DNA of 27,894 nt from Fonticula alba ATCC 38817 (Eukaryota > Protista > Nucleariida). Positions 945 to 13,238 of this stretch are shown here, piece after piece (positions within the stretch are counted from its first letter, which is position 1; every line of letters starts with the position of its first letter). The stretch lies in assembly GCA_000388065.2 (NCBI GenBank), contig KB932214.1, one strand, 5' to 3'. A program made the translations under genes and the position numbers. The notes under the pieces were generated by a model. It ran no database searches and was not told where the DNA came from. It worked only from the letters and a program-made list of their open reading frames with translations.

Positions 945-2558
945 TCAGTGGAGCTGGCTCCGGCGGAGGTGCTTGGCAATGGTGCCGACCACGGTGTGCT
1001 TGGGGTCCACGCGGTGGGCGGCCGGGCGGCGGGCACCGGTCGGGGGCTGGCGGCCGCGGTGCACCGCCTGCCGGCGGTCCGCCCGCTCGCGGTCGTCCTC
1101 CTGCTCGTGGTCATGCTCCTCCTCCTCCTCCTCGTCGTCGTCCTCCTCCTCCTCCTCGGCGAAGACGTCCTCGTCCAGGATGTCGGCGAAGTCGGCCTCA
1201 TCGTCCTCGGCCCCGAAGAGGTCCAGCTGCTCGTCGAAGCGGTTGAACATGAAGTCCGTGCCGAAGAGGCCGTCCAGCACCTCGTAGTCGTCCTCCTCGC
1301 CCTCGACGCGGAAGCCCTCGGGGCTGTTGCGGAAGCGGCTGTCCACCATGAAGCGGGCGCTCTGGCCGAGGACGCCGTGCGGGTCGCGCGGCCGCCCGAG
1401 CAGGCTGCTGTTGAGGTTGATGTAGGCGTCGGTCATGCTGGCGCGGGCCTTCTCGAAGATGGCCCGGGCGGCCACCTGCCAGCTGGGGGTCTTGACGGTC
1501 ATGCGGTGGGTGCCGTCGATGATGTCGACGCTGATGTTGGACCGGCCGTAATCCAGGGCATAGGGGTGGCCATTGTCCACGGCCAGCTTCTGGCCATTGA
1601 GGAACACGCCGAAGTGCGGGTGGAAGGCCACCGTGTCGTTGCCGACGCGGATGCCCAGGCGGTTCATGTAGGTCCCCTTGAGGGAGTCCAGCCGGGTGAA
1701 CTGGGCGTTCATCTGGAAGTCGGCGTCGGTGATGATGTTGTACACCCGGCCGGAGTGGCCCTCGAAGTAGTAGTCGGCCCCGTTGAAGCCCTTCATGTGG
1801 GGGTCCTGCTTGCCGGCGGCGCTCATGATGGACTGGCAGGTGTCGATGGTCCGGCAGAAGTCCTCCCCCTCGCACCGGTACACCGGGCCCAGGGTCATGG
1901 CGCACTCGCGGGGCGAGTCGCGCAGCTTGCCCTGGCCGGCCTTGCCGCACTGCTCCAGGCTCTGGTAGCAGTAGGTCTTGCCGGGGCAGTTGCACACCAC
2001 GTCGTCGCGCGGGGCCAGGCCCCGCCGGGCCAGGTGCCGGGGCTGCTTGAGCCCGGCGTTGGGGGCGGCGGCCCCGGCGGCGGCCGCCGCCGCGGCCAGG
2101 TCCTCCCCGCCGGGGATGTTTTCCAGGGCATCGGCCAGCAGGGCGTCGGCGGCGGTGGCCACGGCGTCGGCCGTCGGGCCGAGGGGCGGCGCGCGGCCGG
2201 CCTCCACGTCGGCGCTGGCCTGGGCCGCCATTTGCAGGAACTCATTCATCATGCCGGGCAGGTCGATCTTGACCATGTTGCCGCCGGTGCCGATCAGCAC
2301 GCCGCCATCCTCCTCCATGCGGACCTCGGCACGGTGGCCATCGATCATGAGCCGGCCGTCCTCGATGGACACGCGGCTCGGGTCGAAGTCGCCCACCGGG
2401 GCGGCCGACCGGCCGGCCACGACCCCGGTCGAGGTGGCCAGCGCCAGGGCGATGGTCGTGCAGAGGGCCGTCTTGCGGCCGGCGCGCAGGACCGTGTCCA
2501 CCACCTTGCGGGCGGGGGTGTTGGGAGCGGCCTCCTGGGTGTGACGCATGTTGGTCAT
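945..2558 (-). CDS. Secreted 8-Cys-module / QDPH VWD-like (root-cap-like) protein, paralog 1, 537 aa, acidic then basic C-terminal tail
   Basis: Intronless ORF from ATG 2558 (MTNMRH..) to TGA 945-947. Hydrophobic N-terminal segment ALCTTIALALATSTGVVAG; 8-Cys module 1836-1994; motifs QDPHMKGFNG, PHGVLGQ, EGEEDDYEVLDGLFGTDFMFNRF shared with the other two paralogs. The supplied 803-aa ORF runs upstream through an N gap and that part is not trusted. Domain naming is from motif recall, not a search. Confidence 0.85.
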   Translation of the reverse strand: MTNMRHTQEAAPNTPARKVVDTVLRAGRKTALCTTIALALATSTGVVAGRSAAPVGDFDPSRVSIEDGRLMIDGHRAEVRMEEDGGVLIGTGGNMVKIDLPGMMNEFLQMAAQASADVEAGRAPPLGPTADAVATAADALLADALENIPGGEDLAAAAAAAGAAAPNAGLKQPRHLARRGLAPRDDVVCNCPGKTYCYQSLEQCGKAGQGKLRDSPRECAMTLGPVYRCEGEDFCRTIDTCQSIMSAAGKQDPHMKGFNGADYYFEGHSGRVYNIITDADFQMNAQFTRLDSLKGTYMNRLGIRVGNDTVAFHPHFGVFLNGQKLAVDNGHPYALDYGRSNISVDIIDGTHRMTVKTPSWQVAARAIFEKARASMTDAYINLNSSLLGRPRDPHGVLGQSARFMVDSRFRNSPEGFRVEGEEDDYEVLDGLFGTDFMFNRFDEQLDLFGAEDDEADFADILDEDVFAEEEEEDDDEEEEEEHDHEQEDDRERADRRQAVHRGRQPPTGARRPAAHRVDPKHTVVGTIAKHLRRSQLH

Positions 2559-3476
2559 GGTTCTGCGCCGAGGCCGAGCGCGGGGGCCGGGGGGNNNNNN
2601 NNNNNNNNNNNNNNNNNNNNNNNNNNNNNNNNNNNNNNNNNNNNNNNNNNNNNNNNNNNNNNNNNNNNNNNNNNNNNNNNNNNNNNNNNNNNNNNNNNNN
2701 NNNNNNNNNNNNNNNNNNNNNNNNNNNNNNNNNNNNNNNNNNNNNNNNNNNNNNNNNNNNNNNNNNNNNNNNNNNNNNNNNNNNNNNNNNNNNNNNNNNN
2801 NNNNNNNNNNNNNNNNNNNNNNNNNNNNNNNNNNNNNNNNNNNNNNNNNNNNNNNNNNNNNNNNNNNNNNNNNNNNNNNNNNNNNNNNNNNNNNNNNNNN
2901 NNNNNNNNNNNNNNNNNNNNNNNNNNNNNNNNNNNNNNNNNNNNNNNNNNNNNNNNNNNNNNNNNNNNNNNNNNNNNNNNNNNNNNNNNNNNNNNNNNNN
3001 NNNNNNNNNNNNNNNNNNNNNNNNNNNNNNNNNNNNNNNNNNNNNNNNNNNNNNNNNNNNNNNNNNNNNNNNNNNNNNNNNNNNNNNNNNNNNNNNNNNN
3101 NGGGGGGGGGGGGGGGGGTCCTCCCTGGGCGAGCGATCTGTCCACTTTCGTACCTGGGGCGAGGGGAGGGAGGTGGTGGGGTGTCACTTGGGATTGGCCT
3201 CGGGCGTGCGGGGCGCGAGAGCAGAGGGTGCTGGGCGGCGGCTGGGGGGCGCGGATGAGTGTATGTGCGTGTGTGTGTGTGTATGTGTGTGTCGAGCGTC
3301 CACGGAAGGGGAGCGGGCGGGGGAGGGGCGGGGATCTCGAGCGGGATGGCAATCACACCAGGCGGCAGGAGAGGGGTGCAGAGGGGGGGGGGGGGGGGGG
3401 CAGGGGCGGGCGCGAGAAACTACGGCTCTGGGCATGTCTGCTTGGCTGCTGGGTGTTTTGGCGGCGGCCGCGCCGT

Positions 3477-3484
3477 CTTTTATA
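3477..3484 (-). promoter_or_regulatory. TATA box (TATAAAAG), probable promoter of paralog 1
   Basis: Perfect TATAAAAG on the minus strand in very GC-rich DNA, upstream of paralog 1; the same octamer precedes paralog 2. Confidence 0.55.
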
Positions 3485-11600: not shown

Positions 11601-11924
11601 NNNNNNNNNNNNNNNNNNNNNNNNNNNNNNNNNNNNNNNNNNNNNNNNNNNNNNNNNNNNNNNNNNNNNNNNNNNNNNNNNNNNNNNNNNNNNNNNNNNN
11701 NNNNNNNNNNNNNNNNNNNNNNNNNNNNNNNNNNNNNNNNNNNNNNNNNNNNNNNNNNNNNNNNNNNNNNNNNNNNNNNNNNNNNNNNNNNNNNNNNNNN
11801 NNNNNNNNNNNNNNNNNNNNNNNNNNNNNNNNNNNNNNNNNNNNNNNNNNNNNNNNNNNNNNNNNNNNNNNNNNNNNNNNNNNNNNNNCGCCCCCCCCCC
11901 CCAGACACACCACCCGACGACACC

Positions 11925-13238
11925 ATGACCAACTCGCAGCACGGACAGGGCCCCATGACGCGCCTCGCGGCGACCGGGCTGCTGCTGGCCCTCGGCACGC
12001 TGCTGGCCCCGTTGGCCGGGGCGGCGCCGGTGCCCCAGGGCCAGGAAGCGCCGGCGAACGCGGCGGCCATGGCCACGGGCCACGACCAGGCCGGGGTGAC
12101 CGTGGCCGACGCGGCCGATGTGGCGGCCGACCCGGCGATCATGATGCCGGCCATCGGGGCGCCGCCCCTGGACGAGACGGCGGCCACGGAGCCGGCGGCC
12201 CCGGGCGGGCCCGGGCACCGGGTGCCGCGCGAGCTGACCTGCAAGTGCCCCCGGCGGGTGCGGTGCTTCCAGACCGTGAGCGACTGCCGGTCCGGGCGCA
12301 ATGTCAAGGTCCTGTCGGACCCGCGGCAGTGCATCTTCAATGCCAGCCCCATTTACCAGTGCGAGGGCGAGGAGCCGGCCCGGTGCCGGACCATCGACAA
12401 CTGCCAGCCGGTGGAGCAGGGCAGCGGCAAGCAGGACCCCCACATGAAGGGCTTCAACGGGGCGGACTACTACTTTGGCGGCCACGCCGGCCGGGTGTAT
12501 TCCATTGTGTCGGACCGGGACTTCGCGCTGAATGCCCAGTTCACGCGGCTGGACGCCCTGCAGGGGACGTACATGAATCGCCTGGGCATGCGCGTGGGCC
12601 GGGACATTGTGGCCTTCCACCCGCACTTCGGGGTCTTTGTCAATGGGGACAAGCTGGCGGCCCGCGGCCGGCGGCCGTACGCCCTGGACGAGGGCCGGGC
12701 CCACCTGCTGGTGGACCACCTGGACGGGACGCACCGGCTGACGCTGAAGACCGACACGTGGCAGGTGTCCGGCCGGGCGGTCATCGAGTCCGGCCGGGCC
12801 ACCATGGCCGACGCCTACATCAATGTCGGGGTCAGCCTGCACGCGCGCCCGGTCAACCCCCACGGCATCCTCGGCCAGACGGCCCTCTTCATGGTGGACA
12901 GCCGGTACCCGTCGCATGTGGCCAGGGGCTTCCGCGTGGAGGGCGAGGAGGATGACTACGAGGTGCATGATGGCCTGTTCGGCACGCGGCACCGGTTCAA
13001 TCGCTTCGTGGAGGTGTCGACGCCGGCCGACTCGGCCGGCAGCGCCACCCGGGTGCCCGGGGGCCTTAGCATCACCGAGCGCCGGACGGCCGATCGCCTG
13101 CGCCTCCGGGCGCCGGGCGGTGGGCACGAATCGGCCCTCGAGTCGGCCGCCCGCCGCGGGCTCGTGGCCCTGGGGACGGTGTCCGAGGCGGTGCTGCGCG
13201 AGGCGGCCGCCCGCATGGCCGAGGAGGAGACCCCCTAG
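11925..13238 (+). CDS. Secreted 8-Cys-module / QDPH VWD-like protein, paralog 3, 437 aa
   Basis: Intronless ORF from ATG 11925 (MTNSQH.., cf. MTNMRH.. in paralog 1) to TAG 13236-13238. Hydrophobic segment LAATGLLLALGTLLAPLAGA; 8-Cys module 12240-12404; QDPHMKGFNG, PHGILGQ, EGEEDDYEVHDGLFG motifs. Confidence 0.88.
   Translation: MTNSQHGQGPMTRLAATGLLLALGTLLAPLAGAAPVPQGQEAPANAAAMATGHDQAGVTVADAADVAADPAIMMPAIGAPPLDETAATEPAAPGGPGHRVPRELTCKCPRRVRCFQTVSDCRSGRNVKVLSDPRQCIFNASPIYQCEGEEPARCRTIDNCQPVEQGSGKQDPHMKGFNGADYYFGGHAGRVYSIVSDRDFALNAQFTRLDALQGTYMNRLGMRVGRDIVAFHPHFGVFVNGDKLAARGRRPYALDEGRAHLLVDHLDGTHRLTLKTDTWQVSGRAVIESGRATMADAYINVGVSLHARPVNPHGILGQTALFMVDSRYPSHVARGFRVEGEEDDYEVHDGLFGTRHRFNRFVEVSTPADSAGSATRVPGGLSITERRTADRLRLRAPGGGHESALESAARRGLVALGTVSEAVLREAAARMAEEETP

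What the first reader, a model, noticed from the sequence alone, without database searches (positions are those of the whole stretch)
945..13238. Cluster of three secreted paralogs with a modular 8-Cys + DPH-domain architecture
Seen: three genes (-,+,+) share the layout signal segment / variable pro-region / 1-2 eight-Cys modules / exactly 10 residues (QSIMSAAGKQ, KRTHGGNVTQ, QPVEQGSGKQ) / DPH-initiated ~190-aa domain with no Cys / unrelated tail. Established: DPH-x-x-GF..PHG-x-LGQ motifs are typical of VWD-like, ITIH C-terminal and plant root-cap-type extracellular domains. Inference: a locally expanded matrix, wall, adhesion or effector family with a conserved chassis and variable payload; I do not recognise this domain combination.
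Basis: partly seen in the sequence, partly recalled or inferred. Interest (0 to 1): 0.75.

Follow-up and report, generated by a model that had tools for sequence, protein, structure and literature searches.

The report
Secreted Fonticula proteins with VWD-like domain
Three real genes of the slime-mould-like amoeba Fonticula alba encode secreted proteins in which a small eight-cysteine module is always followed, ten residues later, by a cysteine-free relative of the mucin/von Willebrand D domain that begins at a probable self-cutting Asp-Pro site; the domain is a known, widespread kind, while the combination is confined to this lineage and is uncharacterised.

Summary
The window (Fonticula alba, contig C14) carries three paralogous genes: g1 945-2558(-), g2 7120-7798 + 8111-8661(+) with one GT-AG intron, and g3 11925-13238(+). 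Each has one N-terminal hydrophobic segment, one or two eight-Cys modules, exactly 10 residues, then a Cys-free ~190-aa domain starting with DPH. All four assembly gaps lie outside the coding sequences.

The "DPH domain" is not new. It is a divergent von Willebrand D (VWD) domain:
- Its predicted fold matches 35 VWD entries at Z 8-12.7, and the next unrelated match is at 3.7.
- The DPH proline superimposes on the first residue after the known Asp/Pro self-cleavage in FCGBP and RGMB.
- A profile search finds 1368 relatives in protists and bacteria that carry the canonical GDPHF.GFDG motif. Many of these pass Pfam VWD.
- Plant Root_cap and ITIH C-terminal domains are the nearest look-alikes.

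What is particular to this lineage:
- The eight-Cys module has no significant fold or family match. It occurs 10 times in the genome, only in front of this domain.
- Gln replaces Gly before DPH.
- The domain has no Cys and no C8/TIL partners.
- The family has about 10 genes on six contigs, and only g1/g3 are a local duplicate.

Best reading: secreted matrix or mucin-like proteins whose C-terminal VWD-like domain cuts itself off. Cleavage was not tested here.

The scan had already noted paralogues elsewhere in this genome (s1-065600, s1-066626).

The parts
945..2558 (-). g1 coding sequence (537 aa plus stop), intronless; equals public model P0002
   Evidence: GC3 periodicity
2415..2471 (-). g1 N-terminal hydrophobic segment (residues 30-48). 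It is weak and follows a 29-residue n-region, so it could be a signal peptide or a signal anchor.
   Evidence: it is the only hydrophobic window in the protein, KD15 1.63
1836..1994 (-). g1 eight-Cys module (C189-C241)
1806..1835 (-). g1 10-residue spacer ending in K-Q
1236..1805 (-). g1 DPH-initiated Cys-free VWD-like domain (residues 252-441)
   Evidence: Pfam VWD 18.5-21.1 bits, just under the 22.9 cut-off
948..1235 (-). g1 tail: an acidic E/D run followed by a basic end. It has no FEAxVDM terminus.
7120..7798 (+). g2 exon 1: signal peptide (7120-7194), eight-Cys module A (7273-7449), module B (7471-7638), spacer (7639-7668) and the start of the DPH domain (7669-7798)
7799..8110 (+). g2 intron, GT...AG, phase 1, containing 10-mer and (CA)n repeats. 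The same intron position occurs in paralogues on C2 and C5.
8111..8661 (+). g2 exon 2: the rest of the DPH domain (to 8547) and the tail, with the family-specific C-terminal FEATVDM (8638-8658) and the stop codon
11925..13238 (+). g3 coding sequence (437 aa plus stop), intronless; equals public model P0001
11955..12023 (+). g3 signal-like hydrophobic segment (about residues 11-33)
   Evidence: KD15 2.11 at residue 14; the only such segment in the protein
12240..12404 (+). g3 eight-Cys module (C106-C160)
12405..12434 (+). g3 10-residue Gly/Ser-rich spacer. It has low confidence in the model, so it is probably flexible.
12435..13007 (+). g3 DPH-initiated Cys-free VWD-like domain (residues 171-361)
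   Evidence: fold; relatives
13008..13235 (+). g3 tail, Ala/Arg/Glu-rich, without the FEAxVDM terminus
2595..3101 (.). Assembly gap, 37 nt upstream of the g1 ATG and bordered by a poly-C/G run. It is outside the coding sequence.
11333..11888 (.). Assembly gap, 37 nt upstream of the g3 ATG and bordered by a poly-C run. It is outside the coding sequence.

Best explanation
g1, g2 and g3 are three of about ten Fonticula alba genes for secreted, soluble extracellular proteins.

Layout: signal peptide, then a variable region, then one or two disulfide-rich eight-Cys modules, then a flexible 10-residue linker, then a C-terminal Cys-free VWD-fold domain that begins with the Asp-Pro-His of the GDPH autoproteolysis motif. 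The variable region is Ala-rich or acidic in this window. In paralogues elsewhere it is His-rich, K/T-rich or mucin-like (PKPT)n.

Shown here:
- The genes, their layout and their family.
- The VWD fold.
- The exact superposition of the DPH on known self-cleavage sites.
- The near-invariance of D, P and H across the family.

Inferred:
- The domain cuts the chain between Asp and Pro in the secretory pathway, as in FCGBP, MUC2, RGM and ITIH.
- Because the domain has no cysteine to tether the halves, and no confidently modelled strand precedes the DPH, the C-terminal domain would behave as a self-removing propeptide.
- That would leave a payload ending in ...Gln-Asp, which becomes part of the cell coat or the secreted sorocarp-stalk matrix.
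For: Genes and layout.

Family: 10 eight-Cys modules, all of them in VWD paralogues; the DPH domain at about 10 loci; one Fonticula clade with 98/96 support and g1+g3 as sisters at 100/99.

Fold:
- AF2 model with pLDDT 70.6 overall and 80-92 in the core.
- The Foldseek top hits are nearly all VWD domains (FCGBP D10, MUC2, VWF, MUC5AC, RGMB), plus Cypridina luciferase at rank 1.
- VIA-align gives Z 8.1-12.7 for 35 VWD-type entries and then drops to 3.7. Model Pro73, the P of DPH, aligns to FCGBP Pro4081 and RGMB Pro169, the first residues of the post-cleavage chains.

Sequence:
- 1368 relatives at E<=1e-3 and 362 at E<=1e-10.
- In these relatives D and P are each present in 155 of 156 aligned motifs, and H in 145 of 156.
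- Relatives pass the Pfam VWD cut-off.
- The relatives' profile hits FCGBP in the PDB at 1.2e-31, with GDPH aligned.

Architecture of relatives: the domain is C-terminal (median 23 residues after it) and Cys-free in 62 of 117.

Literature:
- Asp and His of GDPH are both required for cleavage in FCGBP D10 (PMC10880436).
- Cleavage yields a reactive Asp anhydride. In ITIH3 the new Asp is bound to chondroitin sulfate (PMC8267560).
- ITIH C-terminal domains with GDPH are predicted to be VWD-like (PMC10880436).
- F. alba builds its fruiting body on a secreted ECM stalk (PMC9097593).
Against: - No cleavage, secretion or expression was measured here.
- The residue before Asp is Gln (Asp in one paralogue), not the Gly of every characterised site. 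In FCGBP D10 a cis Gly-Asp bond is proposed to drive the reaction (PMC10880436), and a cis bond is far less likely with Gln.
- The position matching FCGBP Gln4094, where mutation to Ala or Glu gives only partial cleavage, is Glu in g1 and g2 and Gly in g3.
- The window proteins themselves stay below the Pfam VWD cut-off.
- The linker and the C-terminal 40 residues of the model are low confidence, so the absence of a tethering strand is not secure.
- g1's hydrophobic segment is weak.
- A matrix or stalk role is circumstantial.
Confidence: 0.55

Rival explanations
1. Uncleaved adhesive or structural VWD proteins. The DPH is kept for folding reasons only. The intact proteins act as binding or oligomerising matrix, coat or bacterial-agglutinating proteins, with the eight-Cys module and the VWD domain working as one unit.
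For: - Gln replaces Gly before Asp throughout the Fonticula clade.
- Many VWD domains are never cleaved, and recombinant MUC2 C-terminus stays uncleaved although it has GDPH (PMC10880436).
- The eight-Cys module is never found apart from the domain, and the spacing is fixed at 10 residues. That fits a single structural unit.
Against: - D, P and H are almost invariant across more than 150 diverse relatives, while neighbouring positions vary.
- Non-cleaving VWD domains aligned lack the motif (for example MUC5AC D1 and D2).
- The linker before DPH is predicted to be flexible.
Confidence: 0.3
2. Peptide-precursor reading. A second cut upstream of the eight-Cys module, together with the Asp-Pro cut, releases a free disulfide-rich peptide of about 65-70 aa as a signal or antimicrobial agent. 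The rest of the protein is a carrier.
For: - An Arg often lies 2-4 residues before the first Cys (g3, g2 module B and paralogues on C1, C2 and C5).
- g1 has Arg-Arg 11 residues upstream.
- The module is compact and confidently modelled (pLDDT 79).
- Another first-stage note on this window proposed the same idea (s1-065874).
Against: - No consistent dibasic site exists. Several paralogues go straight from (PKPT)n into the module.
- g2 has two modules joined head to tail with no DPH between them.
- Nothing was tested.
Confidence: 0.1
3. Annotation or assembly artefact: the similarity reflects mis-assembled repeats, pseudogenes or bacterial contamination rather than three functional eukaryotic genes.
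For: - Four gaps lie in the region, two of them directly upstream of g1 and g3.
- Relatives of the domain are common in bacteria.
Against: - The reading frames are open with strong GC3 periodicity.
- g2 has a spliceosomal GT-AG intron at a position shared with paralogues.
- g1 and g3 are only about 60% identical.
- The start-codon context is conserved.
- The Fonticula copies form their own clade, apart from the bacterial sequences.
Confidence: 0.03

Closest known systems
GDPH-bearing VWD domains of FCGBP, MUC2 and MUC5AC (Pfam PF00094)
   Same: - Same beta-sandwich fold (Z 11-12.5).
- The Asp-Pro-His sits at the same structural place as the autocatalytic cleavage site.
- Both are secreted, and in paralogues the sequence context is mucin-like.
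   Different: - No cysteines in the domain, so there is no inter-fragment disulfide.
- No C8, TIL or E domains follow it.
- Gln rather than Gly precedes Asp.
- The domain is single and C-terminal rather than repeated.
- The Pfam score is below the cut-off.
[quoted passage not shown]
   Same: - A VWD-like domain at the C-terminal end that starts at an Asp/Pro-His cut. It is removed, and it activates the new C-terminal Asp (literature in PMC8267560 and PMC10880436).
- An Atlas look-alike cluster carries this family.
   Different: - No HMM match to PF06668 in the proteins or the genome.
- The N-terminal payload is unrelated: there is no VIT or VWA domain.
- Coupling to a glycan is wholly untested here.
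Plant Root_cap proteins (PF06830)
   Same: - This is the nearest cluster in the ESM Atlas, both by features (0.94) and by structure (TM 0.81 over 192 residues).
- 2 of 119 relatives match the HMM at E 2.6e-4.
- Both are secreted proteins with a DPH...SD..Q.NA.F start.
   Different: - There is no Root_cap HMM match in the Fonticula proteins or genome.
- No eight-Cys module was seen outside the Fonticula clade.
- The Atlas rows are leads, not tests.
Repulsive guidance molecules (RGM; partial VWD with GDPH autocleavage)
   Same: A disulfide-rich N-terminal part is followed by a VWD-type domain cut at Asp/Pro. The model aligns from its DPH Pro73 to RGMB Pro169, with Z 10-11.
   Different: - In RGM the halves stay disulfide-linked and the C-terminal half is GPI-anchored.
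- The Fonticula proteins have no Cys in the domain and no hydrophobic C-terminus.
Uncharacterised bacterial and protist 'VWD domain-containing proteins' with a C-terminal GDPH domain
   Same: They are direct sequence relatives (E down to 1e-42). The domain is likewise C-terminal, often Cys-free, and sits behind variable N-terminal parts.
   Different: - They carry canonical (W)GDPHF.
- Their partners differ: Laminin_G_3, F5/8-C, FG-GAP and ice-binding-like domains.
- They lack the eight-Cys module.
TB / eight-Cys domains (fibrillin, LTBP, properdin N-terminal domain), compared with the eight-Cys module only
   Same: Eight cysteines in about 55-60 residues. The only recurring weak structural hits are the properdin N-terminal domain and fibrillin TB/hyb domains.
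   Different: - The matches are not significant (Foldseek E 0.9 or worse, probability 0.25 or less; Z 2.8 or less).
- There is no Cys-Cys-Cys triplet.
- There is no Pfam match.

Membership tests
VWD (Pfam PF00094 / PROSITE VWFD) | Score at or above the Pfam gathering cut-off (22.9 bits) | tested here: not met
   g1 scores 18.5-21.1 bits, g3 scores 12.6-13.4 bits, and the g2 exons give no hit. The genome-wide six-frame scan with PF00094 was silent. Paralogue P0003 is nevertheless named 'VWFD domain-containing protein' by UniRef.
VWD (Pfam PF00094 / PROSITE VWFD) | VWD beta-sandwich fold | tested here: met
   35 VWD-type entries at Z 8.1-12.7, rmsd 2.8-4.7 over 121-150 residues. The next unrelated entry is at Z 3.7. 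Foldseek probability is 1.00 for FCGBP, MUC2 and VWF. Caveat: this is a predicted model with mean pLDDT 70.6.
VWD (Pfam PF00094 / PROSITE VWFD) | Sequence homology to accepted members | tested here: met
   The link is transitive. The Fonticula profile hits relatives at E 1e-42 to 1e-15. 47 of 119 relatives hit PF00094 at E<=1e-3, and several exceed the cut-off. The relatives' profile hits FCGBP at 1.2e-31 and MUC5AC at 1.5e-5 in the PDB. The Fonticula-only profile found no PDB chain.
VWD (Pfam PF00094 / PROSITE VWFD) | Conserved intradomain cysteines and a C8-TIL-E continuation (D assembly) | tested here: not met
   There is no Cys from DPH to the stop in g1, g2 or g3. There are no C8 or TIL hits.
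GDPH autocleaving VWD subgroup | Gly-Asp-Pro-His at the start of the domain | tested here: inconclusive
   Asp-Pro-His is present and structurally in register. However, Gly is replaced by Gln in g1-g3 and most paralogues, and by Asp in one.
GDPH autocleaving VWD subgroup | Actual Asp/Pro chain cleavage | not testable with these tools
   This needs protein chemistry.
ITI_HC_C (PF06668) | HMM match | tested here: not met
   There is no hit at E<=10 in four Fonticula domains and four relatives. There is none in the genome. The only link is an Atlas look-alike cluster in which 13% of members carry the family.
ITI_HC_C (PF06668) | C-terminal propeptide removed at Asp/Pro, with the new Asp esterified to a glycan | not testable with these tools
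   The C-terminal position and the Asp-Pro-His start are shared. The chemistry is unknown.
Root_cap (PF06830) | HMM match | tested here: not met
   There is no hit in the Fonticula proteins or the genome. 2 of 119 relatives match at E 2.6e-4. The Atlas structure row has TM 0.81.
TB / eight-Cys domain (fibrillin, LTBP), for the Cys module | TB fold and Cys pattern with a Cys-Cys-Cys triplet | tested here: not met
   The pattern is C-x-C-x5-7-C-x6-C-x14-20-C-x9-11-C-x5-7-C-x5-C, with no triplet. The best fold hits are not significant.
C8 domain (PF08742), for the Cys module | HMM or fold match | tested here: not met
   There is no Pfam hit at E<=1. No C8-containing chain appears among the fold matches of the module model.

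The most novel reading that the evidence does not exclude
The Cys-free, C-terminal (G/Q)DPH domain is a self-cleaving 'coupling propeptide' of the ITIH type. Cutting at Asp/Pro would generate a C-terminal Asp anhydride on the payload, and this would be transferred to a hydroxyl of a matrix polysaccharide. That would covalently stitch mucin-like and eight-Cys proteins into the Fonticula coat or stalk. The same chemistry would then underlie a large uncharacterised family in bacteria, protists and plants (Root_cap).
Probability: 0.2. Interest if true: 0.75.

Novelty: new variant of a known kind. Interest (0 to 1): 0.42.

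Why it matters
Fonticula alba is the sorocarpic sister lineage of fungi, and it builds its fruiting body on a secreted matrix of unknown composition.

A ten-member family of secreted, partly mucin-like proteins with a VWD-type, probably self-cutting end domain gives concrete candidates for that matrix.

It also shows that the mucin/VWF 'D' fold with its Asp-Pro-His site is not an animal invention. It belongs to a broad family that includes bacterial and protist proteins, with plant Root_cap and ITIH-type domains as apparent look-alikes.

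If the domain proves to be a removable coupling propeptide, it would generalise a chemistry so far known from a few vertebrate proteins. If it does not cleave, these are ordinary lineage-specific extracellular proteins.

Tried and rejected
- The Fonticula-only profile against PDB sequences gave only a His-tag artefact.
- Pfam PF00094, PF06830 and PF06668 scans of the whole genome in six frames were all silent.
- The third word search, with a mixed alignment, was swamped by low-complexity words and returned only three proteins.
The sample or organism of the closest environmental relatives (P0005-P0009) could therefore not be traced. Two cluster look-ups gave no names for them.
- Literature: no paper in the library holds both 'Fonticula' and 'VWD'. 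'DPHFII' was not found. PMC1218904 is not held.
- A general C-terminal sorting signal was rejected. FEAxVDM occurs five times in the genome, only in this family, and the reversed control gives 0.
- A free-standing eight-Cys protein family was rejected. All 10 genomic matches lie in VWD paralogues.
The spliced 409-aa protein used in the alignment and tree is the database's own model P0004, as returned.
- Nothing in the window looks human.

Full report
**Source and gene models.** The window is 70% G+C with (CA)n tracts. It lies at contig C14:325024-352917 of a 31.3-Mb assembly. A paralogue in this genome is NCBI's H696_01757 of Fonticula alba, which UniRef names 'VWFD domain-containing protein'.

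There are three genes.
- g1 is 945-2558(-), 537 aa.
- g3 is 11925-13238(+), 437 aa.
- g2 has two exons, 7120-7798 and 8111-8661(+). They are separated by a GT...AG phase-1 intron that restores the family's ...SLKG|TYMGR... sequence.

The public models P0002, P0001 and P0004 (409 aa) agree with these structures. I searched the g2 exons apart, by reference, and did not join them. Where a spliced g2 protein was needed I used the database's own P0004.

**Gaps.** The program's warning was tested first. The gaps at 2595-3101 and 11333-11888 each end 37 nt upstream of the ATG of g1 and g3. They are bordered by poly-C/G runs. The other two gaps are intergenic. No coding sequence crosses a gap, and the 800-1150-aa 'ORFs' that read through N runs are artefacts. 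All three start codons share an ACC-ATG context.

Third-position GC reaches 0.9-1.0 exactly over the three coding sequences. It is flat across the 3.1-7.1 kb and 8.7-11.9 kb spacers and across the g2 intron.

**The observation.**
- Each protein has a single hydrophobic segment, at its N-terminus. It is strong in g2 and g3 and weak in g1. None has a hydrophobic C-terminus.
- The cysteines form C-x-C-x5-C-x6-C-x14-17-C-x9-11-C-x5-7-C-x5-C modules. g1 and g3 have one module and g2 has two.
- The last Cys is exactly 10 residues before Asp-Pro-His in all three. No Cys follows to the stop.
- Across the genome the same spacing holds in 8 of 9 paralogues (6 residues in one).
Paralogue matches run from E 1e-134 to 1e-30.

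**Family in the genome.** The DPH domain matches about ten loci on C14 (three), C7, C5 (two), C1, C2 (two) and C3. The C3 copy (P0038) has a degenerate DPE and a large insertion.

The eight-Cys profile finds ten copies, all in these genes and none elsewhere.

In a maximum-likelihood tree of the module plus domain, the nine Fonticula copies form one clade (98/96).
- g1 and g3 are sisters (100/99), that is, a local inverted duplicate at about 60% identity.
- g2 groups with the copies on C5 and C1.
- P0038 was left out of the tree. The C5b gene was represented by one exon.

Paralogues elsewhere have His-rich, K/T-repeat, acidic, basic and long (PKPT)n mucin-like regions before the module.

Five paralogues, g2 included, end in FEAxVDM. 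This motif occurs only in this family, and the control count was 0. A sixth paralogue has the variant FEAGVDV. g1 and g3 lack it. 'Locally expanded' and 'unrelated tail' are thus only partly right.

**What the DPH domain is.**
- Pfam gives only sub-threshold VWD hits for the window proteins: 12.6-21.1 bits against a cut-off of 22.9.
- An AlphaFold2 model of g3 residues 100-365 was built with the paralogue alignment. It has pLDDT 70.6 overall and 80-92 in the beta core.
- Foldseek matches it almost exclusively to VWD domains: FCGBP D10, MUC2, VWF, MUC5AC and RGMB. Cypridina luciferase ranks first.
- VIA-align gives Z 8.1-12.7 for 35 such entries and then drops to 3.7.
- The alignments start at the DPH. 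Model Pro73 aligns to Pro4081 of FCGBP D10 chain B and to Pro169 of RGMB. These are the first residues of the chains made by the known Asp/Pro self-cleavage.

**Relatives.** A profile search of 1.84 billion representative proteins found 1368 relatives at E<=1e-3 and 362 at E<=1e-10.
- They carry (W)GDPHF.GFDG..YDF.G..G..YN..SD...Q.NA.F.
- D and P are each present in 155 of 156 aligned motifs, and H in 145. The residue before D is G in 109 of them, Q in 14 and D in 9.
- Several relatives exceed the Pfam VWD cut-off. 47 of 119 match it at E<=1e-3, and two match Root_cap.
- Named relatives are bacterial MAG proteins from Vampirovibrionales/Melainabacteria, Desulfosarcinaceae, Hyphomicrobiales, Chromatiales and Myxococcota. 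Some are already called 'VWD domain-containing protein'. One is from a ciliate.
- Their profile hits FCGBP in the PDB at 1.2e-31, with the GDPH aligned.
- In these relatives the domain sits at the C-terminal end (median 23 residues after it) behind variable N-terminal parts. It is Cys-free in 62 of 117.
- The ESM Atlas puts plant Root_cap clusters nearest (features 0.94, structure TM 0.81). Bacterial VWD, BMPER/zonadhesin VWD and a cluster with ITI_HC_C follow. These rows are leads only.

**The eight-Cys module.** Modelled alone, it has pLDDT 79 and a small alpha/beta unit. It has no significant structural neighbour. The best Foldseek hit is the properdin N-terminal TB-like domain at E 0.9, and all VIA Z scores are 3.6 or lower. 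It has no Pfam match.

That clade has 100/99 support. The organisms behind those sequences could not be traced.

**Mechanism.** Published work on FCGBP D10 shows that the Asp and the His of GDPH are each required for autocatalytic Asp/Pro cleavage. A Gln 14 residues downstream contributes. A cis Gly-Asp bond is proposed to promote the attack. ITIH C-terminal domains with GDPH are predicted to have VWD topology (PMC10880436).

Cleavage produces a reactive C-terminal Asp anhydride. In ITIH3 that Asp becomes linked to chondroitin sulfate. In FCGBP the halves stay joined by a disulfide (PMC8267560).

In the Fonticula proteins Asp, Pro and His are conserved and in structural register. The domain has no Cys. 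The preceding 10 residues are a low-confidence Gly/Ser-rich linker. If cleavage occurs, the C-terminal domain should therefore come off like the ITIH propeptide rather than stay attached as in FCGBP.

Three facts count against cleavage:
- Gln replaces Gly before Asp.
- Glu or Gly stands at the position of FCGBP Gln4094.
- There is no experimental evidence at all.

I therefore hold the secreted VWD-fold identity with high confidence (about 0.9). I hold self-cleavage at about even odds, and glycan coupling at about 0.2.

F. alba forms its sorocarp on a secreted ECM stalk (PMC9097593). That makes a matrix role plausible but unproven. No paper in the library links Fonticula and VWD.

**Relation to earlier scan notes.** The scan had already met paralogues of this family on other DNA of the same genome.
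- A followed-up note calls one a secreted root-cap/VWD-domain, mucin-like protein of a widespread family (s1-065600). My results agree.
- Another note records the DDPH variant (s1-066626), which I saw in the C5 paralogue.
- Two notes on this window concern the eight-Cys module (s1-066094) and a double-processing idea (s1-065874). I keep the latter as a low-probability rival.

**Verdict.** The domain is a known kind (VWD superfamily). The obligate pairing with an unrecognised eight-Cys module, the Cys-free QDPH form and the ten-gene family are lineage-specific variants. Function is inferred, not shown.

Noticed in passing
window 2558-2594 and 11889-11925: Both assembly gaps stop exactly 37 nt upstream of the g1 and g3 start codons and are bordered by poly-C/G runs. 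The 12 bases around the ATG (ACCATGACCAAC) are identical in the two genes. This suggests a shared, hard-to-sequence promoter-proximal element in the inverted duplicate.
   Followed up: partly
window 7799-8110; also L009/L010 (C2) and L007/L011 (C5): The g2 intron is filled with a 10-mer repeat (ACAATCACAC) and (CA)n. A break at the same position (after ...LKG) occurs in two paralogues. Two other paralogues (L004, L005) are instead interrupted further downstream, after ...F-I-(I/V)-D.
   Followed up: partly
window 3102-7119 and 8662-11924: These are intergenic spacers of about 4 kb and 3.3 kb at about 70% G+C. They have no codon periodicity and many spurious long ORFs. They contain (CA)n microsatellites and G/C homopolymers.
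   Followed up: partly
L003, L004, L006 (paralogues on C7, C5, C2): The pro-regions of these paralogues hold long His-rich repeats (HHHG-type), K/T dipeptide repeats and 20-40 copies of PKPT-like mucin or extensin-type repeats. The window genes lack all of these.
   Followed up: no
G000:C3:3354803-3355978 (protein P0038, 739 aa): This is a degenerate family member. It has DPE instead of DPH, a large low-complexity insertion inside the domain and a long Pro/Gly-rich N-terminus. It may be a decaying or neofunctionalised copy.
   Followed up: no
window 15166-16323 (-): This ORF has strong GC3 periodicity and a Pfam AMP-binding enzyme match (E 1.7e-8, covering the C-terminal half of the profile). 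It is unrelated to the finding.
   Followed up: partly
window 18300-22600: Several strongly codon-periodic stretches on changing frames suggest a multi-exon gene or genes. The long ORFs tried there have no Pfam match.
   Followed up: partly
relatives P0013, P0027, P0010/P0011 (environmental): In the wider family the C-terminal GDPH domain follows very different N-terminal parts: Laminin_G_3, F5/8 type C, DUF1554-like, FG-GAP and ice-binding-like. It looks like a portable C-terminal module.
   Followed up: partly
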